Source: Ranitomeya imitator (lineage: Eukaryota). Taken from it: 64,000 nucleotides of DNA. Of the stretch, positions 22,960 to 61,904 are shown in pieces; position 1 is the stretch's first letter; each line of letters starts with the position of its first letter. The position numbers and the translations under genes were made by a program. Location of the stretch: assembly GCF_032444005.1 (NCBI RefSeq), contig NC_091283.1, positions 510,322,001-510,386,000 of the forward strand, read 5' to 3'. The notes under the pieces were generated by a model. That model did not search any database. It was not told where the DNA came from and saw only the letters and a list, made by a program, of their open reading frames with translations.

Positions 22960-24240
22960 TAGGAGAGGATTAGATACACGGCTCAGCATAATATCACACA
23001 GTATAGGATTAGATGCACGGCTCAGCAGACAGTATCACACAGGAGAGGATTAGATACACGGCTCAGCAGTCAGTATTTCACAGGATTAGGCTATGTGCAC
23101 ACGTCAGGATTTTTTCCTGACATAATCCTGAGAATTCTGCCAGAAATCCACGTGCTTTTTTCGCGCGGATTTCTCGCGGAATTTGCGCGTTTTTTTGCGT
23201 TTTTTATTTTTTTATTTTCCGGAATGTCCTTTTTGATAGGAAATCTGCAAAAAATCCGCAAAAAGATAGAGCATGTCCGGATTTTTTGCGGTATGTGTTT
23301 TTTTAGCGGATTTATAGCGTTTTTATGGCGAAATTCCGCAAAAAAAACGCTAAAAATCCGGACGTGTGCACATAGCCTTAGATACACAGGTCAGCACAGG
23401 ATAGGATTAGATACACGGTTCACCAGACAGTATCACACAGGAGAGGATTAGATACACGGCTCAGCAGTCAGTATTCCACAGGAGGATTAGATACACAGGT
23501 CAGCACAGGATAGGATTAGATACACGGTTCACCAGACAGTATCACACAGGAGAGTATTAGATACACGGCTCAGCAGTCAGTATCACACAGGAGAGGATTA
23601 GATACACAGCTCAGCAGACAGTATCACACAGGAGAGGATTAGATACACGGCTCAGCAGTCAGTATTCCACAGGAGGATTAGATACACAGGTCAGCACAGG
23701 ATAGGATTAGATACACGGCTCAGCAGTCAGTATTCCACAGGAGGATTAGATACACAGGTCAGCACAGGATAGGATTAGATACACGGCTCAGCAGACAGTA
23801 TCACACAGGAGAGGATTAGATACACGGCTCAGCAGACACTATCACACAGGAGAGGATTAGATACACGGCTCACCAGACAGTATCACACAGGAGAGGATTA
23901 GATACACGGCTCAGCAGTCAGTATTCCACAGGAGGATTAGATACACAGGTCAGCACAGGATAGGATTAGATACACGGCTCAGCAGACACTATCACACAGG
24001 AGAGGATTAGATACACGGCTCAGCAGACAGTATCACACAGGAGAGGATTAGATACACGGCTCACCAGACAGTATCACACAGGACAGGATTAGATACACGG
24101 CTCAGCAGACACTATCACACAGGAGAGGATTAGATACACGGCTCACCAGACAGTATCACACAGGAGAGGATTAGATACACGGCTCAGCAGACACTATCAC
24201 ACAGGAGAGGATTAGATACTTGGCTCAGCACAGTATAGTG
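22960..24240. repeat. Minisatellite of about 39-41-bp units
   Basis: Repeats of GGATTAGATACACGGCTCAGCAGACAGTATCACACAGGAGA plus a shorter variant unit. Confidence 0.92.
23089..23377. mobile_element. Harbinger-type MITE inserted in the minisatellite
   Basis: TTA|GGCTATGTGCACACGTC...GACGTGTGCACATAGCC|TTA. Confidence 0.9.
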
Positions 24241-24649
24241 ATAGATGCAGGGTCTGATGTCCTGTGAGGAGCTGCAGTGAGGTCGGAGCAGCACAGAGAT
24301 TCTCCCCCATCCCCCTCTGTTACCTCTCTGCAGCTCCAGATAAGAGGACATCAGACCCCAGCACTTCAGACTCTCTAGCGATCCTAGAGATTCAGCCACA
24401 CACCAGGCAGCAGAGGACAGGGAACGGCAGCTGATAGGGTGCATACTAAAACCCTATGTGCCAAATTAACCTATACCTATGGTAGATATTTTAGTCGTAT
24501 TCATCTATACCTCTGCCTATTTTAGATTTTTTTTTACAGTATCATTTTCTTAATTTAGTTTTCCTTTCCACTTCACTCCATTTGAAGCAGAGTAACAAAT
24601 TTATTTACATAAAGTTGCAATACATGAATGTAGGGGTTACATTTTTTGG

Positions 24650-25105
24650 AAACGGAATAAAGGTTTTGAGCTCCGTTTTTTTTATTGGAATATGTTCATA
24701 TTAGTACAACAATGTTATCTTCCAAGTTTCATTAGGATCCTTTTAGAGATTCAGTCTTTATGCACCATATTCTTCCATACCTATGCCTAGTGTGTTATCA
24801 CGGTTGGAAACGGAAAAACGGTTTTGAGCTCCGTTTTTTTATTGGGATAAGTTCATATTAGTACAACAACGTTATCTTCCAAGTTTCATTAGGATCTTTT
24901 TAGGGATTCAGTCTTTATGCGCCATATTCTTCCATACCTATGCCTAGTGTGTTATCACGGTTGGAAACGGAAAAACGGTTTTGAGCTCCGTTTTTTTTAT
25001 TGGAATATGTTCATATTAGTACAACAACGTTATCTTCCAAGTTTCATTAGGATCTTTTTAGGGATTCAGTCTTTATGCGCCATAATCTGCCATACCTATG
25101 CCTAT
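24650..25105 (-). repeat. About 3 copies of the 158-bp satellite unit (left arm)
   Basis: Reverse complement of the 37.7-41.2-kb array unit. Confidence 0.9.
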
Positions 25106-25805
25106 AGTAGTTTTTTTTTCTAAAGTTGAATTTTTTGAATCTATTTTTCCTTTCCACTTCACTCTATTTAAAAATAAATTAGCGGAGGTTAAACTTTAAT
25201 TGCGTTTTCAACAAGGCAAACCCATACATTTCTATATAGTAACTTTACATTTGAAATAAACACTGAATCCCGAAGAAGATCTTGATGAAACTTTGAAAAT
25301 AAGTTTGTCATTAATATGAACTTTTTCCAGCAAGAAAAACAGAGCTTAAAAATGTAATTCTGTTTTCAACAATGTTAATTCATACATTCCTATATAATAA
25401 CTTTACATTTCAAATAAACAGTGAATCCCTAAGTAGATCTTTATCGAAAATTTTTGCCTTAGGCCGGCATCACACTAGCGGACGTATGAGCGGTGCAGAA
25501 AATACGGATTGCATACGGTACAATGATTCTCTATGCCCCAGCTCCTATCTGCCGTATTTTACTGATCCGTATTATACGGTCTTCTACGGCCGTAGAAAAT
25601 CGCAGCATGCTGCGTTTGTCACCGTATTGCGTAAAAAAAATCCGCCAATGAAAGTCTATGGGGGCCAGAAAAATACGGATTACACACGGACCAGCAGTGT
25701 GACTTGCGAGAAATACGCAGCGGTGTTAGCGAGAAAAGCCGGCAATTCAGTGCTGTGTACAGTAAAATCACACTGACAGCTTACATTAGAATAAATGTCT
25801 ACACA

Positions 25806-25848
<43 letters not shown>

Positions 25849-25860
25849 CATACACACACA

Positions 25861-26945
25861 CTAGATGGTGGCCCGATTCTAACGCATCGGGTATTCTAGA
25901 ATATGCATGTCCACGTAGTACATTGCCCAGCCACGTGGTATATTGCCCAGCCGCGTAGTATATTGCACAGCCCACGTAGTATATTGCCCAGTCACATAGT
26001 ATACTGCCCAGCCACGTAGTATACTGCCCAGCCACGTAGTATATTGCCCAGCCACGTAGTATACTGCCCAGCCGCGCAGTATACTGCCCAGCCACATAGT
26101 ATATTGCCCAGCCCACGTACTATATTGCCCAGCCACGTACTATATTGCCCAGCCACATACTATATTGCCCAGCCACGTACTATATTGCCCAGCCACGTAC
26201 TATATTGCCCAGCCACGTACTATATTGCCCAGCCACGTATTACATTGCCCAGCCCACGTAGTATATTGCCCAGCCAGGTTTGTCACATTTTAAAAAAAAA
26301 ATATATACTCACCTTTCTGAGGGCCCTTTGTAGTCAACGGCAGCTTCCTTTCCCAGGGTTGGTATGAGCGCAGGGCCTGTGATGACGTCGCAGTCACATG
26401 TCCGTGACGTCATGGCAGGTCCTTCTCCCATACCATCTTTGCCACCGGAACCTGCAGCGGAAGATGACGGCCAGCGCGAGCGACTACGGAGGGTGAGTAT
26501 AGCAGTTTTTTTTTTATTATTATTTTTAACATTACAACTTTTTACTATTGACACTGCCTATGCGGCATCAATAGTAAAACATGTAATGTTAAAGGGAACC
26601 TGTCACCTGAATTTGGCGGGACTGGTCTTGGGTCATATGGGCGGAGTTTTCGGGTGTTTGATTCACCCTTTCCTTACCCGCTGGCTGCATGCTGGCTGCA
26701 ATATTGGATTGAAGTTCATTCTCTGTCCTCCATAGTACACGCCTGCACAAGGCGAGTATATATTTATTTTTTATTTTTTAAAATGTGACAAACCTGGCTG
26801 GGCAATATACTACGTGGCTGGGCAATATACTACGCGGCTGGCCAATATAGTACGTGGGCTGGGCAATATACTACGTGGGCTGTGCAATATACTACGTGGA
26901 CATGCATATTCTAGAATACCCAAAGCGTTAGAATCGGGCCACCAT

Positions 26946-26949
<4 letters not shown>
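25861..26949. mobile_element. Non-autonomous TIR element with about 60-bp TIRs and 20-21-bp subterminal tandem repeats, flanked by mirror-image microsatellites
   Basis: (CA)n-CTAGATGGTGGCCCGATTCTAACGC...GCGTTAGAATCGGGCCACCATCTAG-(TG)n; arrays of TATATTGCCCAGCCACGTAG and its reverse complement. Confidence 0.8.

Positions 26950-27034
<85 letters not shown>
26950..27034. repeat. (GT)n(AT)n microsatellite
   Basis: About 35 GT units followed by AT units. Confidence 0.95.
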
Positions 27035-27461
27035 TCTAGGGATTCCACTCACTCAGGTGCGATGGCTGACACTCAGGAGGCACGTTCCTTTAAAGTTCAC
27101 TGGGTTTATGGCTTCATAAACCATATGGCAAAACAACAGAAAACAAATAGCCTTTGGTTCAGGCAAAGAAAAACAAGTGTCCAGTTCATCCGGCTCAGTC
27201 CTGAAGCCTTGACACACTCAGGAGGGTTTCACCTCCACACATATCTACTGTGTTAAGCATTAGCCTGTCTTATATAGGACTAACCACACCCAGTAATCTA
27301 TCACATGATCAGCCATGTGGTCTGACATCACCACAGGTCCTGAAACACATATATATACATGGTTATGTAAAACAAAGAAATATTCCAGGCTACATTACAG
27401 CGACAAGGTACCTATGTGACACATACCTCCCGTCGACCACACACCCGTTAGCCATGCTACA
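27035..27461 (-). repeat. 3' LTR of the Gmr1-like element
   Basis: Matches 35979-36405 with 4 differences seen by eye; preceded on minus by PPT GGCAGAGGGGGGAGGTA. Confidence 0.95.
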
Positions 27462-30400
27462 TACCTCCCCCCTCTGCCTAAAGCCGTGGGGCTTGGCACT
27501 TTCCCCAACCAAACAAGGGATTCTTGATAGGGCATCCGCATTACCGTGCAGCTTTCTGGCCTTATGTTCCACATGGAAACTAAAGTCCTGCAGGGCTAAG
27601 AACCAACGGGTTACCCTAGCATTCTTACCCTTTGTTTCCCTCATCCATCTAAGTGGGGCATGGTCAGATATTAGTCTGAATTTACGACCCAGCAGATAGT
27701 ACCGTAACGTGTCCACCGCCCACTTTATGGCCAAACACTCTTTTTCCACGACTGAGTAGTTCTTCTCAGATGAGGACAGCTTTCTACTCAGATAGAGAAC
27801 GGGATGCTCCTCCCCATGTAGCTCTTGGGAAAGGACTGCTCCTACCCCAGCATCTGAGGCATCTGTCTGAAGAATAAATTCTTTCTTGAAGTCTGGGGCT
27901 ATCAGAACGGGCTGCTTACATCGAGCCCCTTTCAACTCTTGGAAGGCTGACTGTCTCTTCGGACCATTTAACCATCACTGACTTTGTCCCCTTCAGCAGA
28001 TCAGTCAGAGGCGCAGCCACTGTGGCGAAGTTCGGGATGAACCTCCTGTAATATCCCACGATTCCCAGAAAGGCTTTAACTTGCTTTTTTGAAACTGGTT
28101 TCGGCCACGTTTGGATTGCCTCCACTTTCCTGATTTGGGGCTTTATTTCTCCACGACCCACTATATAGCCTAGGTATTTAGCTTCTTCCTTACCCAAGGC
28201 ACACTTCTTCGGGTTCACTGTAAACCCCGCCTCTCTTAGAGCATCAAACACCGCTTGGACTTTCTCCAGATGACTCTCCCAGTCCGGGCTAAAGATGACC
28301 ATATCATCTAGGTACGCAGCAGCGTAGGCCTTATGGGGTGCAAGGACTCTATCCATAGCCCTCTGGAAGGTCGCCGGAGCTCCCTGTAGGCCAAACGGCA
28401 TCCGGACATACTGGAAGCATCCATCAGGTGTCGAAAAGGCCGTCTTCTCCTTGGCTTCCTGTGCCATGGGGATCTGCCAATACCCCTTTGTCAAATCCAA
28501 GGTGGATATATATCTAGCGTGCCCAAGCCTTTCGATGAGCTCATCAACGCGGGGCATGGGATAAGCGTCAAACTTGGAGACCTCATTCAACTTCCGATAG
28601 TCATTGCAAAACCTCCACTCTCCATCAGGTTTTGAGACCAGGACAATTGGGCTCGACCAACCGCTCTTGGATTCCTCAATGACTCCAAGCTTCAACATAC
28701 GCTCCACTTCCTTGGAGATAACTTCTTGACGAGCCTCAGGAATACGATAGGGCTTCACGTTCACCCGCACATGTGGCTCTGTTAGAACCTCGTGCTCTAT
28801 GACCTTCGTGTGTCCTGGCAACTCTGAAAACAGGTCCCTGTTTTTCTGGAGTAACTCCCGGCACTGCTGTTTCTGGTTCTTCGATAGCGTCTCTGCTATA
28901 GTAACAGCTCCAACCTCACCTTCTGGGTTGCTTAACAACGATAGAGTTACTGTCGGCTCTCTATCTTGCCACGGCTTGATGAGGTTGACATGGTAAACTT
29001 GGAATGGTTTCCGTCTTCCTGGTTGGTGAATTTTATAATTTACCTCACCAAGTTTCTCGACAACCTCATATGGCCCTTGCCATTTGGCCAAGAACTTGCT
29101 TTCCACCGTCGGAACTAACACAAGAACTCGGTCTCCCGGATTGAACTGCCTCACTCTTGCAGACCGGTTGTAGACCCTGGCCTGAGCTTCTTGTGCTTGG
29201 AGAAGGTGATCTTTCACGATAGGCATCACCTTTGCAATCCTCTGCTGCATCAGGGCCACATGCTCAATGACGCTTCTCTGGGGCGTGACTTCGCCTTCCC
29301 AGGTTTCCTTGGCTATATCCAGGAGTCCTCGTGGATGTCGGCCATATAGAAGCTCAAACGGTGAGAACCCTGTGGAGGCCTGTGGAACTTCACGAATGGA
29401 AAACATCAGATAGGGTAAGAGACAATCCCAGTCTCTACCGTCTTTCTCTATAGCTTTTCTCAGCATGCTCTTCAGTGTCTTGTTAAATCTCTCAACAAGG
29501 CCATCTGACTGGGGATGGTGCACCGAGGTCCTCAACTGGGAGATTTTCAGGGCTTTGCATAACTCCCTCATCACCTTGCTCATGAAAGGTGTACCCTGGT
29601 CAGTCAGGATCTCCTTCGGCAGACCTGTCCGGGAAAAGACATGGACCAACTCGCAGGCTATGCTCTTTGAGGATGAATTTCTCAAGGGAATTGCCTCAGG
29701 ATAGCGTGTGGCATAGTCCAGGATGACTAATATATACTGATGGCCCCGAGCTGATTTAACTAAGGGACCGACCAAGTCCATGGCAATTCTCTCGAACGGT
29801 ACCTCAATAATGGGCAGTGGCACAAGGGGGTTCCCGAAATGAGGAGTGGGAGCAGTTAGCTGACATGTAGGGCAGGACCTGCAATAGTTCACTATTTCCC
29901 GGTGACACCCAGGACAATAGAACCTCTGCACAACCCGTTCCTGCGTTTTTTCCGCCCCTAGGTGTCCACCCAAGATGTGTGAATGGGCCATGTCCAACAC
30001 CTTCCGTCTATACGGACCCGGCACTACCAACTGCTCTACCAACTCCTCCCTTATTTTCGTGACCCGGTACAACAACTCCCCACTCATCAGAAAATGGGGA
30101 AATCTTGTGTCTGCCCCCGGCTCCTGTACCACCCCGTCAATAACTGTGACATTATTAAAGGCTTCCCTTAGAGTGGGGTCCCTATGTTGGGCAGTCCCAA
30201 AATTTTCACCGGATACCTCTAACTCCAGAATGTCAGATGCAGGGGACACTTCCTCGTCATCTCCAACCAGGACACAAAAAGGAAACCTGTCTGACTCTGG
30301 GTGTGGCGACACCCTTCCAGGGTTCATTGGTTCCCTACTCTTGCTAGGGAGCTCAGAACCTTTCCCCCACAAATCCCAAAACAAACAGAAATCCCGGCCA

Positions 30401-30509
30401 ATAATTATAGGGTGCAACAAGTCCTGAACGACGCCGACTATGTGGGACTCAGTGCCACATGCCGTTTCAATGTCCACCCTGGCCATAGGGTAGTCCTTTG
30501 CATCACCAT
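27390..30509 (-). pseudogene. Gmr1-like pol: protease C-terminus, integrase, RT, RNase H; frameshift near 27955
   Basis: HSHILGGH...CRSCPTC zinc finger, FERIAMDLVGPL core, then HEVLT...PYRIP, AAYLDDMVIFS, FILQTDASDAGVGAVLSQ; a 2-bp deletion splits ETESAFQELKG. Confidence 0.93.
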
Positions 30510-30617
30510 AACATACATAGTAACATAGTTAGTAAGGCCGAAAAAAGACATTTGTCCATCCAGTTCAGCCTATATTCCATCATAATAAATCCCCAGATCT
30601 ACGTCCTTCTACAGAAC

Positions 30618-33524
30618 CTAATAATTGTATGATACAATATTGATCTGCTCCAGGAAGACATCCAGGCCTCTCTTGAACCCCTCGACTGAGTTCGCCATCA
30701 CCACCTCCTCAGGCAAGCAATTCCAGATTCTCACTGCCCTAACAGTAAAGAATCCTCTTCTATGTTGGTGGAAAAACCTTCTCTCCTCCAGACGCAAAGA
30801 ATGCCCCCTTGTGCCCGTCACCTTCCTTGGTATAAACAGATCCTCAGCGAGATATTTGTATTGTCCCCTTATATACTTATACATGGTTATTAGATCGCCC
30901 CTCAGTCGTCTTTTTTCTAGACTAAATAATCCTAATTTCGCTAATCTATCTGGGTATTGTAGTTCTCCCATCCCCTTTATTAATTTTGTTGCCCTCCTTT
31001 GTACTCTCTCTAGTTCCATTATATCCTTCCTGAGCACCGGTGCCCAAAACTGGACACAGTACTCCATGTGCGGTCTAACTAGGGATTTGTACAGAGGCAG
31101 TATAATGCTCTCATCATGTGTATCCAGACCTCTTTTAATGCACCCCATGATCCTGTTTGCCTTGGCAGCTGCTGCCTGGCACTGGCTGCTCCAGGTAAGT
31201 TTATCATTAACTAGGATCCCCAAGTCCTTCTCCCTGTCAGATTTACCCAGTGGTTTCCCGTTCAGTGTGTAATGGTGATATTGATTCCCTCTTCCCATGT
31301 GTATAACCTTACATTTATCATTGTTAAACCTCATCTGCCACCTTTCAGCCCAAGTTTCCAACTTATCCAGATCCATCTGTAGCAGAATACTATCTTCTCT
31401 TGTATTAACTGCTTTACATAGTTTTGTATCATCTGCAAATATCGATATTTTACTGTGTAAGCCTTCTACCAGATCATTAATAAATATGTTGAAGAGAACA
31501 GGTCCCAATACTGACCCCTGCGGTACCCCACTGGTCACAGCGACCCAGTTAGAGACTATACCATTTATAACCACCCTCTGCTTTCTATCACTAAGCCAGT
31601 TACTAACCCATTTACACACATTTTCCCCCAGACCAAGCATTCTCATTTTGTGTACCAACCTCTTGTGCGGCACGGTATCAAACGCTTTGGAAAAATCGAG
31701 ATATACCACGTCCAATGACTCACCGTGGTCCAGTCTATAGCTTACCTCTTCATAAAAACTGATTAGATTGGTTTGACAGGAGCGATTTCTCATAAACCCA
31801 TGCTGATATGGAGTTAAACAGTTATTCTCATTGAGATAATCCAGAATAACATCCCTCAGAAACCCTTCAAATATTTTACCAACAATAGAGGTTAGACTTA
31901 CTGGCCTATAATTTCCAGGTTCACTTTTAGAGCCCTTTTTGAATATTGGCACCACATTTGCTATGCGCCAGTCCTGCGGAACAGACCCTGTCGCTATAGA
32001 GTCACTAAAAATAAGAAATAATGGTTTATCTATTACATTACTTAGTTCTCTTAGTACTCGTGGGTGTATGCCATCCGGACCTGGAGATTTATCTATTTTA
32101 ATCTTATTTAGCCGGTTTCGCACCTCTTCTTGGGTTAGATTGGTGACCCTTAATATAGGGTTTTCATTGTTTCTTGGGATTTCACCTAGCATTTCATTTT
32201 CCACCGTGAATACCGTGGAGAAGAAGGTGTTTAATATGTTAGCTTTTTCCTCGTCATCTACAACCATTCTTTCCTCACTATTTTTTAAGGGGCCTACATT
32301 TTCAGTTTTTATTCTTTTACTATTGATATAGTTGAAGAACAGTTTGGGATTAGTTTTACTCTCCTTAGCAATGTGCTTCTCTGTTTCCCTTTTGGCAGCT
32401 TTAATTAGTTTTTTAGATAAAGTATTTTTCTCCCTATAGTTTTTTAGAGCTTCAGTGGTGCCATCCTGCTTTAGTAGTGCAAATGCTTTCTTTTTACTGT
32501 TAATTGCCTGCCTTACTTCTTTGTTTAGCGACATTGGGTTTTTCCTATTTCTAGTCCTTTTATTCCCACAAGGTATAAACCGCTTACACTGCCTATTTAG
32601 GATGTTCTTAAACATTTCCCATTTATTATCTGTATTCTCATTTCTGAGGATATTGTCCCAGTCTACCAGATTAAGGGCATCTCTAAGCTGTTCAAGCTTT
32701 GCCTTCCTAAAGTTCAATGTTTTTGTGACTCCCTGACAAGTCCCCCTAGTGAAAGACAGGTGAAACTGCACAATATTGTGGTCGCTATTTCCTAAATGCC
32801 CAACCACCTGCAGATTTGTTATTCTGTCAGGTCTATTAGATAGTATTAGGTCTAAAAGTGCTGCTCCTCTGGTTGGATTCTGCACCAATTGTGAAAGATA
32901 ATTTTTCTTGGTTATTAGCAGAAACCTGTTGCCTTTATGGGTTTCACAGGTTTCTGTTTCCCAGTTAATATCCGGGTAGTTAAAGTCCCCCATAACCAGG
33001 ACCTCATTATGGGTTGCAGCTTCATCTATCTGCTTTAGAAGTAGACTTTCCATGCTTTCTGTTATATTTGGGGGTTTGTAACAGACCTCAATGAGAATTT
33101 TGTTACCATTTTTCCCTCCATGAATTTCAACCCATATGGACTCGACATCCTCATTCCCTTCGCTAATATCCTCCCTTAAAGTGGACTTTAGACAAGACTT
33201 TACATAGAGACAAACCCCTCCTCCTCTCCGATTTTTACGATCCTTTCTAAACAGACTGTAACCCTGTAAGTTAACTGCCCAGTCATAGCTTTCATCTAAC
33301 CATGTCTCGGTTATTCCCACTATGTCAAAGTTACCTGTAGATATTTCTGCTTCTAGTTCTTCCATCTTGTTTGTCAGGCTTCTGGCGTTTGCGAGCATGC
33401 AGTTTAGAGGATTTTGTTTTGTTCCAATCTCCTCACTGTGGATTGTTTTAGAAATGTTCTTACCTCCCTTCTGAGTATGTTTTCCTGGGTCGTCTTTGTT
33501 CGAGTCTAATGTTTTTCTTCCCAT
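30618..33524 (-). CDS. CR1 ORF2: APE endonuclease plus reverse transcriptase (about 968 aa from ATG 33524)
   Basis: Uninterrupted ORF; NARSL, GITETW, MGDFNYPDINW, SDHNIV, YLDFSKAFDTVPH, GVPQGSVLGP, FADDTKL. Confidence 0.95.
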   Translation of the reverse strand: MGRKTLDSNKDDPGKHTQKGGKNISKTIHSEEIGTKQNPLNCMLANARSLTNKMEELEAEISTGNFDIVGITETWLDESYDWAVNLQGYSLFRKDRKNRRGGGVCLYVKSCLKSTLREDISEGNEDVESIWVEIHGGKNGNKILIEVCYKPPNITESMESLLLKQIDEAATHNEVLVMGDFNYPDINWETETCETHKGNRFLLITKKNYLSQLVQNPTRGAALLDLILSNRPDRITNLQVVGHLGNSDHNIVQFHLSFTRGTCQGVTKTLNFRKAKLEQLRDALNLVDWDNILRNENTDNKWEMFKNILNRQCKRFIPCGNKRTRNRKNPMSLNKEVRQAINSKKKAFALLKQDGTTEALKNYREKNTLSKKLIKAAKRETEKHIAKESKTNPKLFFNYINSKRIKTENVGPLKNSEERMVVDDEEKANILNTFFSTVFTVENEMLGEIPRNNENPILRVTNLTQEEVRNRLNKIKIDKSPGPDGIHPRVLRELSNVIDKPLFLIFSDSIATGSVPQDWRIANVVPIFKKGSKSEPGNYRPVSLTSIVGKIFEGFLRDVILDYLNENNCLTPYQHGFMRNRSCQTNLISFYEEVSYRLDHGESLDVVYLDFSKAFDTVPHKRLVHKMRMLGLGENVCKWVSNWLSDRKQRVVINGIVSNWVAVTSGVPQGSVLGPVLFNIFINDLVEGLHSKISIFADDTKLCKAVNTREDSILLQMDLDKLETWAERWQMRFNNDKCKVIHMGRGNQYHHYTLNGKPLGKSDREKDLGILVNDKLTWSSQCQAAAAKANRIMGCIKRGLDTHDESIILPLYKSLVRPHMEYCVQFWAPVLRKDIMELERVQRRATKLIKGMGELQYPDRLAKLGLFSLEKRRLRGDLITMYKYIRGQYKYLAEDLFIPRKVTGTRGHSLRLEERRFFHQHRRGFFTVRAVRIWNCLPEEVVMANSVEGFKRGLDVFLEQINIVSYNY

Positions 33525-33535
33525 CCCCTCTTCTT

Positions 33536-34489
33536 CTAGTTTAACGCCCTCCTGATGAGTGTAGCGAGTCTTCTGGCGAATGTGTGTTTCCCAGGTTTGT
33601 TGAGGTGTAGTCCGTCTCTGGCGAGGAGTCCATCGTACAAGTAATTCACACCGTGGTCCAGGAATCCGAATCCTTGTTGTCTGCACCATCGTCTTAGCCA
33701 GTTGTTTGCATCAAGGATCCTGTTCCATCTCCTGGTGCCATGCCCATCTACTGGAAGGATAGAAGAAAAAACTACCTGTGCATCCAGTTCCTTTACTTTC
33801 TTCCCCAACTCTTCAAAGTCCTTGCAGATTGTCGGTAGGTCCTTCCTTGCCGTGTCATTGGTGCCAACATGTATCAGAAGAAATGGGTGGACGTCCTTGG
33901 AGCTGAAGAGCTTTGGTATCCTATCGGTCACATCCTTGATCATCGCACCTGGAAGGCAGCATACTTCTCTTGCAGTTATGTCCGGTCTGCAGATGGCTGC
34001 TTCTGTGCCTCTCAGTAGTGAGTCTCCCACCACCACCACTCTTCGTTGCTTCTTGGCTGTACTTTTTGCTGTCACTTGTTGCTGTGTGCCCTTTTCTTTT
34101 TTGCTTGCTGGTATTGCTTCATTCTTAGGTGTGCCATCTTCATCCTCTACAAAGATTTGATATCGGTTCTTCAGTTGTGTGGTTGGTGATTTCTCCATGG
34201 TCTTCTTGCTTCTTTTGGTCACATGCTTCCACTCATCTGCTTTTGGAGGTTCTCTGACACTTTTTGCACCTTCTGTGACCAGTAGAGATGCTTCTGTTCT
34301 GTCTAGAAAGTCTTCATTCTCTTTGATGAGTTTCAAAGTTGCTATTCTTTCTTCCAGACCCCGCACCTTTTCTTCTAAAAGGGCCACTAGTCTACACTTC
34401 TGACAGGTGAAATTGGATTCTTCTTCTGGTCGATCTGTGAACATGTAGCACATGCTGCAGCTCACCATGTAGGTTGTCACATCTGCCAT
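33536..34489 (-). CDS. CR1 ORF1 (317 aa): zinc-finger-like/coiled-coil N-terminus plus SGNH esterase domain
   Basis: CSMC...CQKC, leucine heptads, VVVGDSLLRG, IHVGTND, DGLHLN. Confidence 0.92.
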   Translation of the reverse strand: MADVTTYMVSCSMCYMFTDRPEEESNFTCQKCRLVALLEEKVRGLEERIATLKLIKENEDFLDRTEASLLVTEGAKSVREPPKADEWKHVTKRSKKTMEKSPTTQLKNRYQIFVEDEDGTPKNEAIPASKKEKGTQQQVTAKSTAKKQRRVVVVGDSLLRGTEAAICRPDITAREVCCLPGAMIKDVTDRIPKLFSSKDVHPFLLIHVGTNDTARKDLPTICKDFEELGKKVKELDAQVVFSSILPVDGHGTRRWNRILDANNWLRRWCRQQGFGFLDHGVNYLYDGLLARDGLHLNKPGKHTFARRLATLIRRALN

Positions 34490-34723
34490 GTTGCTCCTAG
34501 ATCCTGCTGACTTGCTGTGTGTTTTCCTTCTTGTGTAATCTACTCAGCCAAGCTCTCTTGCAATAATGTCCTACAGGCAAAAATTTTACGGCGCGCGGTT
34601 TGGTGATGCTTTCGAAGCAGCTGGTCCCGGCTGTACCCAACGATCTTCTAGCTTAGGGAGACTTCGCTTCTCCCAGAAGGCACCTGGAATATGCAAATTA
34701 GCCTCCTGAAGCTTGAATCCCTG

Positions 34724-35875
34724 GTATGCACCGCACTCCGACCTTCTTTCCTGGGAGCAGGTGGAGAGGAAAAGTGGCCCTCACCAGGGTCACTAGGCTC
34801 CCCGAGTCTAACAGTGCCGTTACTGCTCGACCGTTCACCTTTACGGGAAACGCTAGAGGTCCCTCGTTGGATGGAGAGTTCACACTACAGGCTGGATACG
34901 CATAGTATGAACAACGGCGTCCCATGCTGCAATCCATCTGCTCAGTGGTCTGGGAACAACGGGCAGCTATATGTCCTGGCCCGTGGCACCTCCAACAAAT
35001 AATATCACCCGTAGGGACCTTGGGCACCACCTCCCCCGCCCTTTGTGACCTTGGATGCACCACCCCTTTTTGGGACTCAGCTCCCTTCTGGGACCCCCAG
35101 TACGGCATGGGCTGCCTCCCGAAGGAGCCTTCCAACCCTTGGTATCTCTCAACCAGTCCGATCAGCTCGTCGGCATTCTGGGGATCACCCTGGGCAACCC
35201 AAGACTGTATAGGCCTCGGGAGGGAATGTACAAACCGATCCATCATCACCCGTTCTACCATCTGTGCAGGAGTAGATGACTCTGGCTGCAGCCATTTCTG
35301 GACCAGGTGCAACAGATCAAACATTTGGGAACGAGGTGGTTTGTCCCGGTGATAGGCCCAGCAGTGAACTCGCTGTGCCCTGACAGTCAGTGTCACCCCA
35401 AACGTGCGAGAATCTCGGCTTTCAATTTGTGATACTCTTTGGCATCCTGCAAGGTCAAGTCATAGTACGCCTTCTGGGGTTCTCCCGTCAGGTATGGCGC
35501 CAATACCTCTGCCCACTGCTCTGGCGGAAGTTTTTCCCTCTCAGCGACCCTCTCAAACACCGTCAGGAATGCCTCAACATCATCCCCGGGGGTCATTTTC
35601 TGCAATGTGCATCTTACCGTCTTCCGGACGTGGGTGTCATCAGCCAGACCTGGGGTTGGGGAGCTCATCTTGCCCTGGATGGCGGTTGCCAGAAGCTGCA
35701 TCTGCTGCCGTTGCTCCTGCTGGCTTTGTTGCATCTGCTGCCGTTGCTCCTGCTGGCTCTGTTGTATCTGCTGCATCAACAGCCTGTTGGTCTCTTGCTG
35801 CCTTTGCTCCTGCTGGCTCTGCCGTTGCTCCTGCTGTGACTGTAACTGAACCAAGTGTTTCAGCAGGTCCTCCAT
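34724..35875 (-). pseudogene. Gmr1-like gag (SCAN-like domain, CCHC knuckle) and protease N-half; frameshift near 35398
   Basis: MEDLLKHL, Q-rich repeats, QKMTPGDDVEAFLTVFER, WLQPESSTPAQMVERVMMDRF, CWRCHGPGHIAARC, ALLDSGSLVTLV. Confidence 0.9.
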
Positions 35876-35954
35876 TTTCCCCGGCGATGCTTGCTGGCTT
35901 GCAACAGACTTGACCCAGGACATTAAACAATAGACTTACGTCTCTGCTGGGAAC

Positions 35955-35977
35955 GCTGCCCGCACGTCTACCACCAA
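35955..35977 (-). promoter_or_regulatory. Primer-binding site, tRNA-Ala-like (imperfect)
   Basis: Minus strand TGGTGGTAGACGTGCGGGCAGCG just inside the 5' LTR; resembles TGGTGGAGAATGCGGGCATCG (tRNA-Ala 3' complement, from memory). Confidence 0.55.
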
Positions 35978-35978
35978 T

Positions 35979-36405
35979 TGTAGGGATTCCACTCACTCAG
36001 GTGCGATGGCTGACACTCAGGAGGCACGTTCCTTTAAAGTTCACTGGGTTTATTGCTTCATAAACCATATGGCAAAACAACAGAAAACAAATAGCATTTG
36101 GTTCAGGCAAAGAAAAACAAGTGTCCAGTTCATCCGGCTCAGTCCTGAAGCCTTGACACACTCAGGAGGGTTTCACCTCCACACATATCTACTGTGTTAA
36201 GCATTAGCCTGTCTTATATAGGACTAACCACACCCAGTAATCTATCACATGATCAGCCATGTGGTCTGACATCACCACAGGTCCTGAAACACATATATAT
36301 ACATGGTTATGTAAAACAAAGAAATATTCCAGGCTACATTACAGCGACAAGGTACCTATGTGACACATACCTCCCGTTGACCACACACCCGTTAGCCATG
36401 CTACA
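35979..36405 (-). repeat. 5' LTR of the Gmr1-like element
   Basis: TG...CA ends; 427 bp; ATAT TSD follows. Confidence 0.95.
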
Positions 36406-37669
36406 ATATATATATATATTATATATCTCCCTATACTATGTGTAGACATTTATTTTAGCTATTCTATTGTAAGCTGTCAGTGTGATTTTACTGTACACCG
36501 CACTGAATTGCCGGCTTTTGTCTCTGAGGCCGGCGTCACACTCGGCGTAAGACAATACGGTCCATATATTACGGCCGTAATACGCTGAAAAGTCCCCAAA
36601 ATAGTGGTCCGTAGCTCCTCCGTAGGCAAAGTGTATCATCATAATTGACGCCTCTCCATTATTAATCTGGCTTAATGTCACCTTACAATAGCAAGGTGGC
36701 ATTAACCCTTCATTACCCCATATCCCACCGCTACACGGGAATGGGAAGAGAGTGGCCAAGTGCCAGAATAGGCGCATCTTCCAGATGTGCCTTTTCTGGG
36801 GTGGCTGGGGGCAGGTGTTTTTAGCTGGGGGGGGGGGGGAGGGGGCAGTAATCATGGACCCTCTCCAGGCTATTAATATCTGCCCTCAGTCACTGGCTTT
36901 ACTACTCTGGCTGAGAAAATTGCGCGGGAGCCCACGCCAATTTTTTCCGCCATTTAACCCTTTATTTTAATAGCTAAATTTTGCATATACACACTACTAA
37001 CATTAGTAGTGTGGAATATGCAAAAAAAAGGTGATATGAGATGGTTTACTGTATGTAAACCATGTCTCATATCATGTCGGGTTTTAGGAAGGAGATAGCA
37101 AAAGCCGGTAATTGAATTACCGGCTTTAAAGCTATCTATCGCTGTATGAAGTAATAATATATATACATATATGTGTCTACTGATATATATATATATATAT
37201 ATATATATACAGTATATATGTTTTTGGTTTTTTTTACACATGGATCCCTTGTATAGCCGTGTGTTGGTTTTGCAAGCCTGCGAGAAAAACACGCAGTACG
37301 GATGACATACGGATTACATACGGAGGATGCCATGCGCAAAAAACGCTGACACACCCTGCCTACGGAGGAGATACGGACCACTATTTTGGGGACTTTTCAG
37401 TGTATTACGGCCGTAATATACGGACCGTATTGTCTTATGCTGAGTGTGACTCCAGTCTTAATGACAAACTTATTTTCAAAGTTTCATCAAGATCTTCTTA
37501 GGGATTCAGTGTTTATTTCAAATGTAAAGTTACTATATAGAAATGTATGGGTTTGCCTTGTTGAAAACGCAATTAAAGTTTAACCTCCGCTAATTTATTT
37601 TTAAATAGAGTGAAGTGGAAAGGAAAAATAGATTCAAAAAATTCAACTTTAGAAAAAAAAACTACTATA

Positions 37670-40600
37670 GGCATAGGTATGGCAGATTATGGCGCATAAA
37701 GACTGAATCCCTAAAAAGATCTTAATGAAACTTGGAAGATAACGTTGTTGTACTAATATGAACTAATTCCAATAAAAAAAATGGAGCTCAAAACCGTTTT
37801 TCCGTTTCCAACCATGATAACACACTAAACATAGGTATGGAAGATCAAGCAACGAAGAAGAAAGGAAAGGCGGCACTCACAGATCCATTCCGAGCGGTTT
37901 TTCCGTTTCCAACCATGATAACACATTAGGCATAGGTATGGCAGAATATGGCGCATACAGACTGAATCCCTAAAAAGATCCTAATGAAACTTGGAAGATA
38001 ACGTTGTTGTACTAATATGAACTTATTCCAATAAAAAAACGGAGCTCAAAACCGTTTTTCCGTTTCCACCCGTGATAACACACTAGGCATAGGTATGGAA
38101 GAATATGGCGCATAAAGACTGAATCCCAAAAAATATCTTAATGAAACTTGGAAGATAATGTTGTTGTACTGATATGAACATATTCCAATAAAAAAAAACG
38201 GAGCTCAAACCCGTTATTCCGTTTCTAACCGTGATAACATACTAGGCATAGGTATGGCAGAATATGGCGCATAAAGACTGAATCCCTAAAAAGATCCTAA
38301 TGAAACTTGGAAGATAACGTTGCTGTACTAATATGAACTAATTCCAATAAAAAAAACGGAGCTCAAAACCGTTTTCCCGTTTCCAACCATGATAACACAC
38401 TAGGCATAGGTATGGAAGAATATGGCGCTTAAAGACTGAATCCCTAAAAAGATCCTAATGAAACTTGGAAGATAACGTTGTTGTACTAATATGAACATAT
38501 TCCAATAAAAAAAACGGAGCTCAAACCCGTTATTCCGTTTCTAACTGTGATAACATACTAGGCATAGGTATGGCAGAATATGGCGCATAAAGACTGAATC
38601 CCTAAAAAGATCCTAATGAAACTTGGAAGATAACGTTGTTGTACTAATATGAACTAATTCCAATAAAAAAACGGAGCTCAAAACCGTTTTTTCCGTTTCC
38701 AACCATGATAACACTGGAGGCATAGGTATGGCAGAATATGGCGCATAAAGACTAAATCCCTAAAAAGATCTTAATGAAACTTGGAAGATAACGTTGTTGT
38801 ACTAATATGAACTAATTCCAATAAAAAAAACGGAGCTCAAAACCGTTTTTCCGTTTCCAACCATGATAACACACTAGGCAAAGGTATGGAAGAATATGGC
38901 GCTTAAAGACTGAATCCCTAAAAAGATTCTAATGAAACTTGGAAGATAACGTTGTACTAATATGAACTTATTCCAATAACAAAAATGGAGCTCAAAACCG
39001 TTTTTCCGTTTCCAACCATGATAACACACAAGGCATAGGTATGGCAGAATATGGCACATAAAGACTGAATCCCTAAAAAGATCCTAATGAACCTTGGAAG
39101 ATAACGTTGTTGTACTAATATGAACATATTCCAATAAAAAAAACGGAGCTTAAAATCGTTATTCCGTTTCCAACCGTGTTAACACACTAGGCATAGGTAT
39201 GGCAGAATATGGCGCATAAAGACTGAATCCCTAAAAAGATCCTAATGAAACTTGGAAGATAACGTTGTTGTACTAATATGAACTTATTCCAATAAAAAAA
39301 CGGAGCTCAAAATCGTTTTACCGTTTCCAACCATGATAACACACTAAACATAGGTATGGAAGATCAAGCAACGAAGAAGAAAGGAAAGGCGGCACTCACA
39401 GATCCATTCCGAGCGGTAACTTTATTGCTTAAAAAGCCATCACAGCCGGGGGTACTGAACAAACAGTGCGGCAAGCCTGACGACGGCCGTTTCACGCCCT
39501 CCTGGCGCTTCTACGGAGCTCAAAACCGTTTTTCCGTTTCCAACCATGATAACACACTAGGCATAGGTATGGCAGAATATGGCGCATAAAGACTGAATCC
39601 CTAAAAAGATCCTAATGAAACTTGGAAGATAACGTTGTTGTACTAATATGAACTAATTCCAATAAAAAAAACGGAGCTCAAAACCGTTTTTCCGTTTCCA
39701 ACCGTGATAACACACTAGGCATAGGTATGGCAGAATATGGCGCATAAAGACTGAATCCCTAAAAAGATCTTAATGAAACTTGGAAGATAACGTTGTTGTA
39801 CTAATATGAACTAATTCCAATAAAAAAAAACGGAGCTCAAAACCGTTATTCCGTTTCTAACTGTGATAACATACTAGGCATAGGTATGGCAGAATATGGC
39901 GCATAAAGACTGAATCCCTAAAAAGATCCTAATGAAACTTGGAAGATAACGTTGTTGTACTAATATGAACTAATTCCAATAAAAAAACGGAGCTCAAAAC
40001 CGTTTTTCCGTTTCCAACCATGATAACACTGGAGGCATAGGTATGGCAGAATATGGCGCATAAAGACTAAATCCCTAAAAAGATCTTAATGAAACTTGGA
40101 AGATAACGTTGTTGTACTAATATGAACTAATTCCAATAAAAAAAACGGAGCTCAAAACCGTTTTTCCGTTTCCAACCATGATAACACACTAGGCAAAGGT
40201 ATGGAAGAATATGGCGCTTAAAGACTGAATCCCTAAAAAGATCCTAATGAAACTTGGAAGATAACGTTGTTGTACTAATATGAACTTATTCCAATAAAAA
40301 AAACGGAGCTCAAAACCGTTTTTCCGTTTCCAACCATGATAACACACTAGACATAGGTATGGAAGAATATGGCGCATAAAGACTGAATCCCTAAAAAGAT
40401 TCTAATGAAACTTGGAGGATAACGTTGTACTAATATGAACTTATTCCAATAAAAAAAATGGAGCTCAAAACCGTTTTTCCGTTTCCAACCATGATAACAC
40501 ACTAGGCATAGGTATGGCAGAATATGGCACATAAAGACTGAATCCCTAAAAAGATCCTAATGAACCTTGGAAGATAACGTTGTTGTACTAATATGAACAT

Positions 40601-41165
40601 ATTCCAATAAAAAAAACGGAGCTTAAAATCGTTATTCTGTTTCCAACCGTGTTAACACACTAGGCATAGGTATGGCAGAATATGGCGCATAAAGACTGAA
40701 TCCCTAAAAAGATCCTAATGAAACTTGGAAGATAACGTTGTTGTACTAATATGAACTTATTCCAATAAAAAAACGGAGCTCAAAACCGTTTTACCGTTTC
40801 CAACCATGATAACACACTAAACATGGGTATGGAAGATCAAGCAACGAAGAAGAAAGGAAAGGCGGCACTCACAGATCCATTCCGAGCGGTAACTTTATTG
40901 CTTAAAAAGCCATCACAGCCGGGGGTAATGAACAAACAGTGCGGCAAGCCTGACGACGGCCGTTTCACGCCCTCCTGGCGCTTCTACGGAGCTCAAAACC
41001 GTTTTTCCGTTTCCAACCATGATAACACACTAGGCATAGGTATGGCAGAATATGGCGCATAAAGACTGAATCCCTAAAAAGATCCTAATGAAACTTGGAA
41101 GATAACGTTGTTGTACTAATATGAACTAATTCCAATAAAAAAAACGGAGCTCAAAACTGTTATTC
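37670..41165 (+). repeat. About 158-bp satellite array (about 22 units) with a 1473-bp higher-order repeat
   Basis: GAAACTTGGAAGATAA recurs at 37986, 38143, 38302, 38460, 38618; variant units with a foreign insert at 37845, 39364, 40837. Confidence 0.95.
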
Positions 41166-41166
41166 G

Positions 41167-41553
41167 TAACACTCAGCGACGCTGCAGCGATATAGACAAC
41201 GATCCGACCTAAACTAGATCGCAGGAGCGTCGCTGTTTAGGTCGCTGTAGAGACGTCAAACACAGCAACTCCAGAATGATGCAGGAGCGATCCAGTGACG
41301 TAACGGCGACTCACTTATCGTTCTCGCTCCATGTAAAAACGTTGCTGGCATCGTTGCTTTTGATGTCAAACATGACGATACACGCCGACCTGACGACCAA
41401 ATAAAGTTCTGGCCTTCTAGCTCCGACCAGCGATGGCACAGCGGGATCCAGATCGCTGCTGCGTGTCAAACACAACGAGATCGCTATCCAGGACGCTGCA
41501 ACGTCACGGATCGTTGTCGTTCTCGTTGCAAAGTTGCTGAGTGTGACAGTACC
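41167..41553. mobile_element. Harbinger-type MITE, left end truncated
   Basis: Right end GTTGCTGAGTGTGACAGTACC; left CACTCAGCGACGCTGCA abuts the satellite end. Confidence 0.65.
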
Positions 41554-41663
41554 TTTAAGATATGCCCCAGCTAGCATGTCCACTTACTCTGCATTCTGTG
41601 GTTGCTAGGGTACTGGATGTGTGAGAGGAGGGTTTATAAACTATCTCAAGGTAGACAATATTA

Positions 41664-41963
41664 GGCTAGGTTCACATTGCGTTACGGCAATCCATTTAGC
41701 GCTAAGCGCTAGCGGATTGCGCTAATGCAATGTCTTTTTAGGGGTCGCGTTAAACGTCCCTGCTAGCGCTAGCTGCAAGCAGCGTCCGAGGCACGCCACA
41801 AAAGAACGGCACATCGCTAGCGCGTGCCGAAAATGGCACGCGCTAGCAATGCGCTTTAACATTGCTGGCAATGGGAGCGCTACCGGACGCGTTGCACGGC
41901 GTTAATTTCGCCGTGCAACGCTGTCTGTTAGCGCTCACCCGAAAACGAAATGAGAACCTAGCC
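41664..41963. mobile_element. Harbinger-type MITE with the same 5' TIR as the element at 57178
   Basis: TTA|GGCTAGGTTCACATTGCG...TGAGAACCTAGCC|TTA. Confidence 0.88.
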
Positions 41964-43782
41964 TTAATATTATCTCACTCAAAACATCCCCCTCCCTCTC
42001 TCAGTTCAGGTACACAGAGAAGGGAGTTGTAAGGCTATGTGCACACGTTCAGTAAAAACGTGAAAAAAACGCTTACATATGGTTCCCAATCATTTCAATG
42101 TAATCCGCAAAACGTGCAAATGTTGCGATTTTTTTCCGCAAAAAAAAAAACCATGTTCATTAATTTTGCGGAATCGCTGATTTCCCACACACTGTAAAAA
42201 ATCTACCATTGGTATAGACAAATATGACTAAAAAAATTTACCATAGGCATAGGTAAAATCTACCATAGGCATAGGTATAGACAAATATATAAAAAAAAAC
42301 CATGTTCATTAATTTTGCGGAATCGCTGATTTCCCGCACACTGTAAAAAATCTACCATTGGTATAGACAAATATGACTAAAAAAATTTACCATAGGCATA
42401 GGTAAAATCTACCATAGGCATAGGTATAGACAAATATGTCACATAGGGTTTTAGTATTTTCCAGCTGACAGTGTGAGGGGAGACAGATGGAGCTGCTCCT
42501 CCAACAGCACAGCTCAGTCACAGTGGAGCTCACAGTCAGGTACACTCCATTGTAGGCTGAAGCAAGATGGCGCCGATCTCCTGCCTCTGCTGTGATGTGG
42601 AGACAGCCCAGGGGGCGTGGCCACATCAGAGCAGAGAGCAGACAATGCTAGCTATGGGGTCGCCTCCCGACTACAGATGTCTATGTCCAGGGCTGCCGTA
42701 TGTGAAGACTGTAAGTGTCGTGCAGCTACACTTACAGTCCTGCAAATGAAAATGGCGGCGCCCAGTGGCAGAAAAAAAAATGAATAAAAAAAAAACAATA
42801 AATACTATGCACTTGAAAATAACTTATAAAAATAAGCAATTAAAGAGGTTTTTTTTTTTTTACAATATTAAAACGCGGCACCTTCCCTTTAATGTCACTG
42901 GGTAACTTTTTTTGCACTGTTTTTGCACTTTACCTACGCCTTGTAATTTTTCCTGCCTTAGTATTTTTTCTTTGCCATAGGCTTATTTGTCCGCACCTTT
43001 TTTCCTATAACAGGGTGTATTAGGGACAGACAACTAGAGCAGGGGCGCCATTTGCGCAGGATTATAGGGTGCCAACCCCCGCAGGCAGGTAGGACGCATC
43101 TAGGTATAGTACAGGGGTATAGGCTGAATTGCCTCAGTATAGGCCAAAATAAACGTGCAATACATAATATAAGTGTGTTACATCGTTATATATTTCAAAA
43201 ACACACTTTTGCACAGGCCTTAATGTATATCCCATTTTCAATATTGATTACATGTGCAACATATTACAAAAAGTGTGCAACATTGTTACTTTTTCCATTT
43301 AGCACACTTTTGCACAATTTATGGAATCTTTGTTCTAGTGACATTTGTTTGTCTGTCTGAAATGTATGGTCTGCTGTTTGTTGTTTTTTCTATTTTCCGC
43401 ACGATAGGGCCTATTAGGGACAGTTAGGGCTAGCCTACGTTGAGCATGGGCGCCATTGGGCAGGTTTATAGGGTGCCAACCTCTGCTGCAAGGTAGGGCA
43501 CAGATAGTTGGCCCTTTAGGGATTTAGTGCACCCTGTATCTTTGTTTGCAGCCATACGTGTTTTAGGTCGTGTATGTTGTATTGTTTTGTTTTAGTAATA
43601 ACAAGTAAATGTTAAGTTTTATTGTGGTCATTTACTTTATCGTGTAATAGTGTCATTTGTCGGTGAGCATCTGACACCAACCACTATATGTATCTTTTAA
43701 AAAGAACTAAATAACTCAACAAAGTAATGTACCAGCCTGGAAGATTTGCAAACAGAATATTTAATTCAGTGATAACTAGGAT

Positions 43783-61903: not shown

Positions 61904-61904
61904 A

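What the first reader, a model, noticed from the sequence alone, without database searches (positions are those of the whole stretch)
24446..42454. 18-kb foldback element with unfamiliar ends whose arms act as a satellite nursery
Seen: TA flanks and perfect 15-bp TIRs (CTAAAACCCTATGTG), about 100 bp of imperfect outer inverted sequence, and a near-identical inner inverted block (25060-25315 vs 37458-37700). One 158-bp unit occurs about 3 times in the left arm and about 22 times in the right, in opposite orientation. The unit contains GGCATAGGTA, also reiterated next to the terminus (42240-42425). Known: type-3 foldback elements (Drosophila FB, Galileo) have modular, tandemly repeated arms. Inference: an unclassified foldback family in which transposase-binding subterminal repeats expand into satellite, able to move kilobases of cargo. 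I do not recognise these termini from any superfamily.
Basis: partly seen in the sequence, partly recalled or inferred. Interest (0 to 1): 0.8.

Follow-up and report, generated by a model that had tools for sequence, protein, structure and literature searches.

The report
Foldback transposon with satellite-repeat arms
This is a real but ordinary kind of jumping-gene relic in a frog-like genome: a small hairpin-shaped DNA transposon whose arms carry a 158-bp tandem repeat. It was later swollen to 18 kb by other mobile elements landing inside it and by local copying of the repeat, so it is not a vehicle carrying 12 kb of cargo.

Summary
Perfect 15-bp inverted ends lie at 24446 and 42454, and these are the only two copies in the window. 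TA lies outside both ends. About 90 bp of outer sequence is inverted at 71% identity, and an inner inverted block is 98% identical. A 158-bp unit occurs 2.9 times in the left arm and about 21 times, inverted, in the right arm.

- **The "cargo" (25462-37457) is a stack of secondary insertions.** It is bounded by MITE ends with TTA on both sides. Inside are a second foldback MITE, a Gmr1-like LTR retrotransposon (LTRs 423/427 identical) and a CR1/L2-like LINE nested in that.
- **Removing the stack leaves a near-perfect hairpin.** The loop is at most about 145 bp, and the core element was roughly 2 kb.
- **The 3-versus-21 asymmetry arose in place.** It comes from recent duplication of a 1.47-kb higher-order block.
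- **The unit is related to the terminus.** Each unit contains about 32 bp that is 84% identical to the sequence next to the right terminus, as in Drosophila Tetris.

I could not test family membership, mobility, the reality of the TSD or the identity of the transposase, because no other copy of this genome was reachable. The kind is known: Tetris, Galileo, and the frog elements miDNA4 and FEDoR. The scan noted similar foldback-plus-satellite structures elsewhere in this genome, but those notes are unchecked.

The parts
24446..24460 (+). Left terminal inverted repeat, CTAAAACCCTATGTG, preceded by TA (24444-24445).
   Evidence: exact match, one of only two in the window.
42440..42454 (-). Right terminal inverted repeat, followed by TA (42455-42456).
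24461..24540 (+). Left subterminal region with two CTATACC..ATGGTAGAT-type motifs. It is 71% inverted homology to the right end.
24541..24645 (+). Module present only in the left arm. It is related to the spacer at 25105-25200 and to the variant units.
   Evidence: nhmmer E about 0.01 to the spacer.
24646..25108 (-). Left 158-bp tandem array, 2.9 units.
25105..25458 (+). Spacer plus two diverged 158-bp 'variant' units in the opposite orientation. 25315-25458 has no partner at 98% and forms the loop, although it still pairs at lower identity with the first ~70 bases of the right arm (37461-37530).
25462..37457 (.). Interior insertion complex, not cargo. It is bounded by GRCYGGMGTCACACT-type MITE ends with TTA at 25459-25461 and 37458-37460. 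It comprises MITE M1 (25462-25720), a foldback MITE with 20-bp arrays (25721-27034 plus 36406-36532), and MITE M2 with 135-bp TIRs (36533-37457).
27035..36405 (-). Gmr1-like LTR retrotransposon. It has 427-bp TG..CA LTRs with 4 differences, a SCAN-like gag, and integrase before reverse transcriptase and RNase H. It inserted in a (TA)n tract.
30507..34690 (-). CR1/L2-like LINE nested in the LTR element, with an esterase-type ORF1 and an endonuclease plus RT ORF2. Ends are approximate.
37458..37667 (-). Inner part of the right arm: mirror of the left spacer plus part of variant unit 1.
37664..41165 (+). Right 158-bp array, about 21 unit equivalents. It is organised as a ~1473-bp higher-order block (9 units plus a 149-bp foreign insert) repeated twice, with the start of a third.
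39364..39512 (+). 149-bp foreign insert at a fixed position in the unit. Sister copies are at 40837-40985, and a 52-bp remnant lies at 37845-37896.
   Evidence: No Rfam match.
41166..42141 (.). Nested MITEs and fragments that replace the outer module of the right arm. One MITE lies at 41166-41547 (41-nt TIRs). A TTA-flanked MITE lies at 41662-41964 (GGCTAGGTTCACA ends).
42142..42439 (+). Two 149-bp tandem copies (99% identical) of the right subterminal region plus adjacent sequence. This doubles the subterminal motifs.

Best explanation
24446-42454 is one old, non-autonomous cut-and-paste DNA transposon of foldback architecture.

**Shown**
- It has 15-bp perfect terminal inverted repeats and reiterated subterminal motifs.
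- Its long inverted arms are built from a 158-bp tandem unit and diverged relatives of that unit.
- It has almost no middle region.
- The 18-kb size is secondary. Insertion into a TTA at the tip of the hairpin, in one event or several, brought in MITEs and a second foldback MITE. That MITE was then hit by a Gmr1-like LTR retrotransposon, which was in turn hit by a LINE.
- Further MITEs landed in the outer right arm.
- The right array grew from a few units to about 21 by duplication of a 1.47-kb block.
- The unit carries a ~32-bp stretch related to the sequence next to the terminus, so the array probably began as a duplication of subterminal sequence.

**Inferred**
- Its original size was roughly 2 kb.
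- A transposase supplied in trans once recognised the ends and the subterminal motifs. The TA flanks would fit a Tc1/mariner-type enzyme.
- This copy is now immobile.
For: - **Ends.** They are unique and perfect, while the adjacent 90 bp is only 71% identical. This is the pattern expected of functionally constrained TIRs, not of a uniform duplication.
- **No inner TIR-like sequence.** None lies at the inner arm ends.
- **Matching arm ends.** The arms stop at homologous positions 25314/37458.
- **Hairpin after excision.** With 25462-37460 removed in silico, the junction is a near-palindrome.
- **Interior is nested elements.**
  - Pfam shows integrase, RT and RNase H, a SCAN-like domain, an AP endonuclease with RT, and an esterase-type ORF1.
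  - The LTRs are 423/427 identical.
  - With the LTR element removed, the inner foldback MITE's arms align across the junction at 91%.
- **Block duplication.** Positional homologues between blocks are 98.7-100% identical, against 94% among all units. The foreign insert sits at the same unit position three times.
- **Unit-to-terminus homology.** 27/32 matches, score 20 against a null of 11.5 with sd 1.9. All 23 GGCATAGGTA copies are inside the element and strand-consistent.
Against: - Only one copy was seen, so transposition as a family is not shown.
- TA is self-complementary, so the 'TSD' may simply extend the TIR (p about 0.07 by chance).
- There is no transposase, no empty site and no second locus.
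- The right arm lacks the 105-bp module present in the left arm, and its outer kilobase is unrelated sequence.
- The only Tc1 element in the window has quite different ends (TA|CAGTACAGACC).
- The TTA flanks of the interior complex would also be expected if two separate Harbinger-type MITEs had inserted independently.
Confidence: 0.6

Rival explanations
1. This is a local inverted duplication (a chromosomal palindrome) of a satellite-bearing segment. It arose in place by template switching or break repair and was never mobile as a unit.
For: - Only one copy is known.
- The inner blocks are 98% identical.
- The surrounding DNA is full of tandem arrays and other inverted structures.
Against: - Identity is very uneven: 100% over the terminal 15 bp, 71% over the next 90 bp, and 98% inside.
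- Homology stops exactly at the perfect 15-mers.
- The flanks share no significant inverted or direct homology.
Confidence: 0.15
2. These are two independent, inwardly truncated copies of a repeat-carrying MITE that landed head to head. Together they merely bracket unrelated DNA.
For: - The outer ends differ considerably (71%).
- The right arm lacks a left-arm module.
- MITEs insert often in this region.
Against: - No inner TIRs exist, even with 3 mismatches allowed.
- Both copies would have to be truncated at the same homologous position.
- The inner blocks are the most similar part of the arms (98%).
- With the interior removed the junction is a palindrome.
Confidence: 0.12
3. One reading: the 18-kb unit, interior included, is or was mobile as such and carries cargo.
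For: The intact perfect TIRs would in principle allow it.
Against: - The interior has its own MITE ends and TTA flanks.
- It is built from layered insertions, of which the LTR element is young (4 differences in 427 bp).
Confidence: 0.06
4. This is a Helitron-type element with a 3' end at both termini. The flanking T/A would then be the host target rather than a TSD.
For: - Each end reads ...TTTTAG followed by T.
- A first-stage note reports a double-3'-end Helitron elsewhere in this genome (unchecked).
Against: - The end is TTAG, not the CTRR consensus.
- There is no G+C-rich subterminal hairpin.
- The subterminal direct motifs are typical of TIR elements.
Confidence: 0.03

Closest known systems
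Tetris, foldback transposon of Drosophila virilis (PMC4079207)
   Same: - Non-autonomous.
- Long inverted arms with a flanking domain, a block of ~220-bp tandem repeats and an inner domain.
- Variable repeat number between arms.
- The repeat shares a short stretch with the flanking domain: 37 bp at ~80% in Tetris, ~32 bp at 84% here.
- The repeats seed longer arrays.
   Different: - Tetris has 8-10-bp TSDs and is assigned to Mutator. Here only TA is shared by the flanks.
- Tetris is an insect element; this one is in a vertebrate.
- Dispersed satellite arrays are shown for Tetris but were not testable here.
Galileo (P superfamily) and FB/NOF of Drosophila
   Same: Foldback architecture with tandem repeats inside the arms. 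The Tetris paper reports that Galileo's arm repeats carry extra transposase-binding sites.
   Different: - Their TSDs are 7 bp (Galileo) and 9-10 bp (FB, as commonly reported). Neither fits the flanks here.
- Autonomous copies are known for them; none is known here.
miDNA4-Xt, a Tc1/mariner MITE carrying a satellite motif in Xenopus tropicalis (described in PMC12054243 and PMC9659126)
   Same: - Frog genome.
- Non-autonomous TIR element with an internal tandem-repeat motif that can multiply.
- A TA-type superfamily would match the TA flanks here.
   Different: - miDNA4 is 300-600 bp and has the layout end-repeat-end, not a foldback.
FEDoR of Rana temporaria (PMC12054243)
   Same: - Frog genome.
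- A ~3.5-kb non-autonomous DNA element with internal tandem arrays, inverted repeats and TSDs.
- Unclassified.
   Different: - FEDoR's arrays have ~22-bp monomers and it has paired inverted repeats at each end.
- In that respect it resembles the nested 20-bp-array element (25721-27034 plus 36406-36532) more than the outer element.

Membership tests
Foldback-type TIR elements (structural class: FB, Galileo, Tetris) | Long inverted arms containing tandem repeats. | tested here: met
   Arms run 24446-25314 and 37458-42454, with 158-bp arrays in opposite orientation.
Foldback-type TIR elements (structural class: FB, Galileo, Tetris) | Short non-coding middle domain, or a transposase gene in the middle. 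| tested here: met
   After removal of the TTA-flanked insertion complex the loop is at most ~145 bp and the junction is palindromic. The only coding ORFs found inside the 18 kb belong to the nested retroelements.
Foldback-type TIR elements (structural class: FB, Galileo, Tetris) | Multiple dispersed copies with TSDs. | not testable with these tools
   There is no access to the source genome. A protein-word search returned nothing, as did two metagenome scans.
Mutator-type Foldback (FB, Tetris) | 8-10-bp target site duplication. | tested here: not met
   The flanks are GGGTGCATA and TATTTTCCA, which are not direct repeats.
Tc1/mariner (including Stowaway-like MITEs and miDNA4) | TA target site duplication. 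| tested here: inconclusive
   TA lies on both sides, but it is self-complementary and the palindrome extends to ATA/TAT. Chance is about 0.07.
Tc1/mariner (including Stowaway-like MITEs and miDNA4) | Ends shared with a transposase-encoding Tc1/mariner element. | tested here: not met
   The only Tc1 in the window (51050-53452, HTH_Tnp_Tc3_2) ends in CAGTACAGACC. Genome-wide, this was not testable.
PIF/Harbinger | 3-bp TWA target site duplication. | tested here: not met
   The outer element has ATA on the left and TAT on the right. The nested interior complex and the MITE at 41662-41964 do have TTA flanks.
Helitron | 5'-TC and 3'-CTRR ends with a subterminal hairpin, and no TIRs. | tested here: not met
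   The ends are perfect 15-bp TIRs. The end reads TTAG with no G+C-rich hairpin.
Satellite DNA in the strict sense | Long arrays at loci independent of the element. | not testable with these tools
   In the window the unit occurs only inside the element. The largest array is 3.5 kb and has higher-order structure.

The most novel reading that the evidence does not exclude
CTAAAACCCTATGTG-ended elements form a so far uncatalogued, TA-targeting foldback family of poison frogs. Its arm repeat has seeded 158-bp satellite arrays elsewhere in the genome, making it a vertebrate counterpart of Drosophila Tetris. Its hairpin tip is a preferred landing site for other transposons.
Probability: 0.2. Interest if true: 0.5.

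Novelty: new member of a known kind. Interest (0 to 1): 0.3.

Why it matters
If the family proves to be multicopy, it would be a clear vertebrate example of a foldback transposon supplying the seed of a satellite. The stages are visible in one locus: a subterminal motif, then a 158-bp unit, then a higher-order block. It would also add to the few described links between transposons and tandem repeats in frogs, whose very large genomes are repeat-driven. As it stands it is a well-resolved example of nested insertion, and a caution that 'cargo' inside long inverted repeats is usually later arrivals.

Tried and rejected
- **Other copies via spurious ORFs.** I searched a 68-aa satellite ORF against the protein collection and got no candidate.
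- **Locus look-up.** An exact look-up of the 856-aa pol ORF, to identify the record, found nothing on file.
- **Metagenome scans.** Two exact-pattern scans, one for a 24-nt unit core and one for the 23-nt subterminal motif, returned 0 hits.
- **Rfam.** A search at gathering threshold over 22-45 kb, and a permissive search over the 149-bp insert, both returned nothing. The 'half hammerhead' of a neighbouring note gets no support from Rfam.
- **Paralogous empty site.** I found none in the window.
- **Flanks as a minisatellite.** I tested whether the flanks are two halves of the neighbouring 41-bp minisatellite. The scores were within the null range.
- **M1 and M2 as mirror copies.** I tested whether they are mirror-image copies, which would indicate one large palindrome. 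The only similarity is ~70% over about 60 bp at one TIR end, so I rejected this.
- **TSD lengths.** TSDs of 3 to 10 bp for hAT, Mutator, P, Transib, CACTA and Harbinger do not fit; no direct repeat longer than TA is present.
- **Earlier scan notes.** Sequence look-ups were blank.
Full report
**1. The observation**

- The 15-mer CTAAAACCCTATGTG occurs exactly twice in the 64-kb window, at 24446-24460 (+) and 42440-42454 (-). The only other matches need three mismatches and are at the chance level.
- TA lies just outside both ends. The complementarity also runs one base further (ATA...TAT), so a 2-bp self-complementary duplication cannot be separated from a slightly longer inverted repeat. TA has a frequency of 0.069 in the window.
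- The outer ~90 bp pair at 71% (24443-24533 with 42457-42379).
- The inner inverted block is larger than stated: 24928-25314 with 37458-37844, 387 nt with 8 differences.
- A profile of the 158-bp unit finds 2 full and 2 partial copies on the minus strand at 24646-25108. On the plus strand at 37664-41165 it finds 18 full, one near-full and 5 partial copies. It finds none elsewhere in the window.
- All 23 copies of GGCATAGGTA in the window lie inside the element, on the strand that fits the arm they are in.
- The window has no N runs.

**2. The "cargo" is a stack of later insertions**

The ORFs between the arms belong to retroelements.
- **LTR retrotransposon, 27035-36405, minus strand.**
  - It has 427-bp TG...CA LTRs that differ at 4 positions.
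  - It carries a SCAN-like gag domain. Its pol runs in the order integrase, reverse transcriptase, RNase H.
  - From established knowledge, not tested further here, that order is the mark of Gmr1-like Ty3/gypsy elements.
  - It sits in a (TA)n tract.
- **LINE, about 30507-34690.** It lies inside the LTR element. It has an esterase-type ORF1, an endonuclease plus RT ORF2, and a CR1/L2-style 3' end.
- **Second foldback MITE.**
  - With the LTR element removed in silico, 25721-26315 aligns in inverted orientation, across the excision junction, with 26749-27034 plus 36406-36532. Identity is 91% outside the arrays.
  - Its arms carry a 20-bp tandem repeat, 18 copies against 5, plus (TA)n and (CA)n runs.
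- **Two flanking MITEs.** These are 25462-25720, and 36533-37457 with 135-bp inverted repeats. They share GRCYGGMGTCACACT-type ends.
- **TTA on both sides.** The outermost ends of the whole complex are flanked by TTA at 25459-25461 and 37458-37460. This is the duplication typical of Harbinger-type elements. It would be equally expected from two separate MITE insertions.

Taking out 25462-37460 joins the arms into a near-palindrome. The region 25315-25458 is left as a loop of at most about 145 bp. The element therefore has essentially no middle domain of its own, and the insertion went into the tip of the hairpin.

**3. The arms**

The left arm is compact. It consists of:
- the terminal repeat;
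- about 80 bp with two CTATACC..ATGGTAGAT-type motifs;
- a 105-bp module;
- 2.9 units of the 158-bp repeat;
- a spacer;
- two diverged "variant" units in the opposite orientation. These match the main unit at E about 1e-14.

The right arm mirrors the spacer and part of the first variant unit, then carries the long array.

The right array is a higher-order structure.
- A block of 9 units plus a 149-bp foreign insert, about 1473 bp in all, occurs twice, followed by the start of a third.
- Units at corresponding positions in the two blocks are 98.7-100% identical, whereas units in general average 94%.
- The foreign insert interrupts the unit at the same base in all three copies.

The 3-versus-21 asymmetry therefore comes from recent duplication in place. 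By divergence this is about as recent as the LTR insertion.

The outer kilobase of the right arm (41166-42141) holds further MITEs.
- One lies at 41166-41547.
- A TTA-flanked one lies at 41662-41964.
- The left arm's 105-bp module is missing here.

The last 298 bp before the right terminal repeat are two 149-bp tandem copies, 99% identical.

**4. Relation between the unit and the terminus**

- Bases 45-76 of the unit align with the stretch from 10 to 41 bases inside the right end, 27 of 32 identical. The score is 20 against 11.5 with sd 1.9 for shuffles.
- The match to the left end is weaker, at z about 2.3.
- A profile of the terminal region hits that spot in nearly every full-length unit. 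Each hit is individually weak but all are in arm-consistent orientation.

This supports an origin of the unit from subterminal sequence. Whether the motif binds a transposase is inference.

**5. Is it a transposon?**

Evidence in favour:
- The terminal 15 bases are perfect, although the next 90 are only 71% identical (p about 0.006). That points to constraint on the ends.
- Homology ends exactly at those 15-mers.
- No TIR-like sequence lies at the inner arm ends.
- Both arms stop at homologous positions.

These points argue against a simple inverted duplication and against two independent copies.

Evidence against or missing:
- Only one copy was seen.
- The TSD is ambiguous.
- There is no transposase and no empty site.
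- TSD lengths of 3-10 bp do not fit, so Mutator, P, hAT and Harbinger are not supported.
- TA would fit Tc1/mariner, but the one Tc1 in the window has different ends.

I put 0.6 on a genuine, now immobile, non-autonomous foldback element.

**6. Comparison with what is known**

- **Tetris (Drosophila virilis).** It has the same design: a flanking domain, ~220-bp repeats in the arms, an inner domain, and a repeat that shares 37 bp at ~80% with the flanking domain. It was shown to seed satellite arrays (PMC4079207).
- **Frogs.**
  - The Tc1/mariner MITE miDNA4-Xt and the unclassified FEDoR element both link DNA transposons to tandem repeats (PMC12054243, PMC9659126).
  - Earlier notes of this scan list several other foldback-plus-satellite structures in this genome, which they take to be a poison frog. 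I did not check those notes, and none is shown to be the same family.

The finding is a new member of a known kind.

**7. What could not be done**

No tool reaches the source genome. Attempts through the protein collection and two metagenome scans were blank. Copy number, TSDs, empty sites, an autonomous partner and free satellite arrays remain open.

Noticed in passing
window 25721-27034 and 36406-36532: A second, nested foldback MITE. Its arms carry a 20-bp tandem repeat (18 copies against 5) and mirrored (TA)n/(CA)n microsatellites. The arms are 91% identical once the LTR element is removed. It is reminiscent of the FEDoR element of Rana.
   Followed up: partly
window 27035-36405: A young Gmr1-like LTR retrotransposon with 4 differences between its 427-bp LTRs. 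It has integrase upstream of reverse transcriptase and a SCAN-like gag domain. It is interrupted by a CR1/L2-like LINE with an esterase-type ORF1 (about 30507-34690).
   Followed up: partly
window 25459-25461 and 37458-37460: The interior insertion complex sits exactly at the tip of the outer hairpin, and the second foldback lies between the two flanking MITEs of that complex. This hints that hairpin tips may attract insertions. There is only one case, so nothing is shown.
   Followed up: no
window 39364-39512, 40837-40985, 37845-37896: A 149-bp G+C-richer foreign insert is carried along in the higher-order repeat. A neighbouring note calls it a Penelope-like fragment with half a hammerhead. 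Rfam gives no match even at E up to 1.
   Followed up: partly
window 24428-24441 and 42462-42475: The two flanks share CAGCTGAYAGKGTG (12 of 14 bases) a few bases outside the element. A naive estimate gives a chance of about 0.002, but flank-to-flank and flank-to-minisatellite alignments are within the null range. This is unexplained.
   Followed up: partly
window 60272-64000: A Harbinger-type DDE transposase ORF (DDE_Tnp_4) abuts a 427-bp repeat that is arranged as tandem and inverted blocks at 99-100% identity and runs to the window's end.
   Followed up: partly
window 51050-53452: A Tc1 element with ~270-bp inverted repeats (91%), TA|CAGTACAGACC ends and a broken transposase; only the HTH part is seen as an ORF.
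   Followed up: partly
window 22324-24236: Two minisatellite arrays lie just left of the element: units of 43/134 bp at 22324-22801 and units of 41/191 bp at 23378-24236.
   Followed up: no
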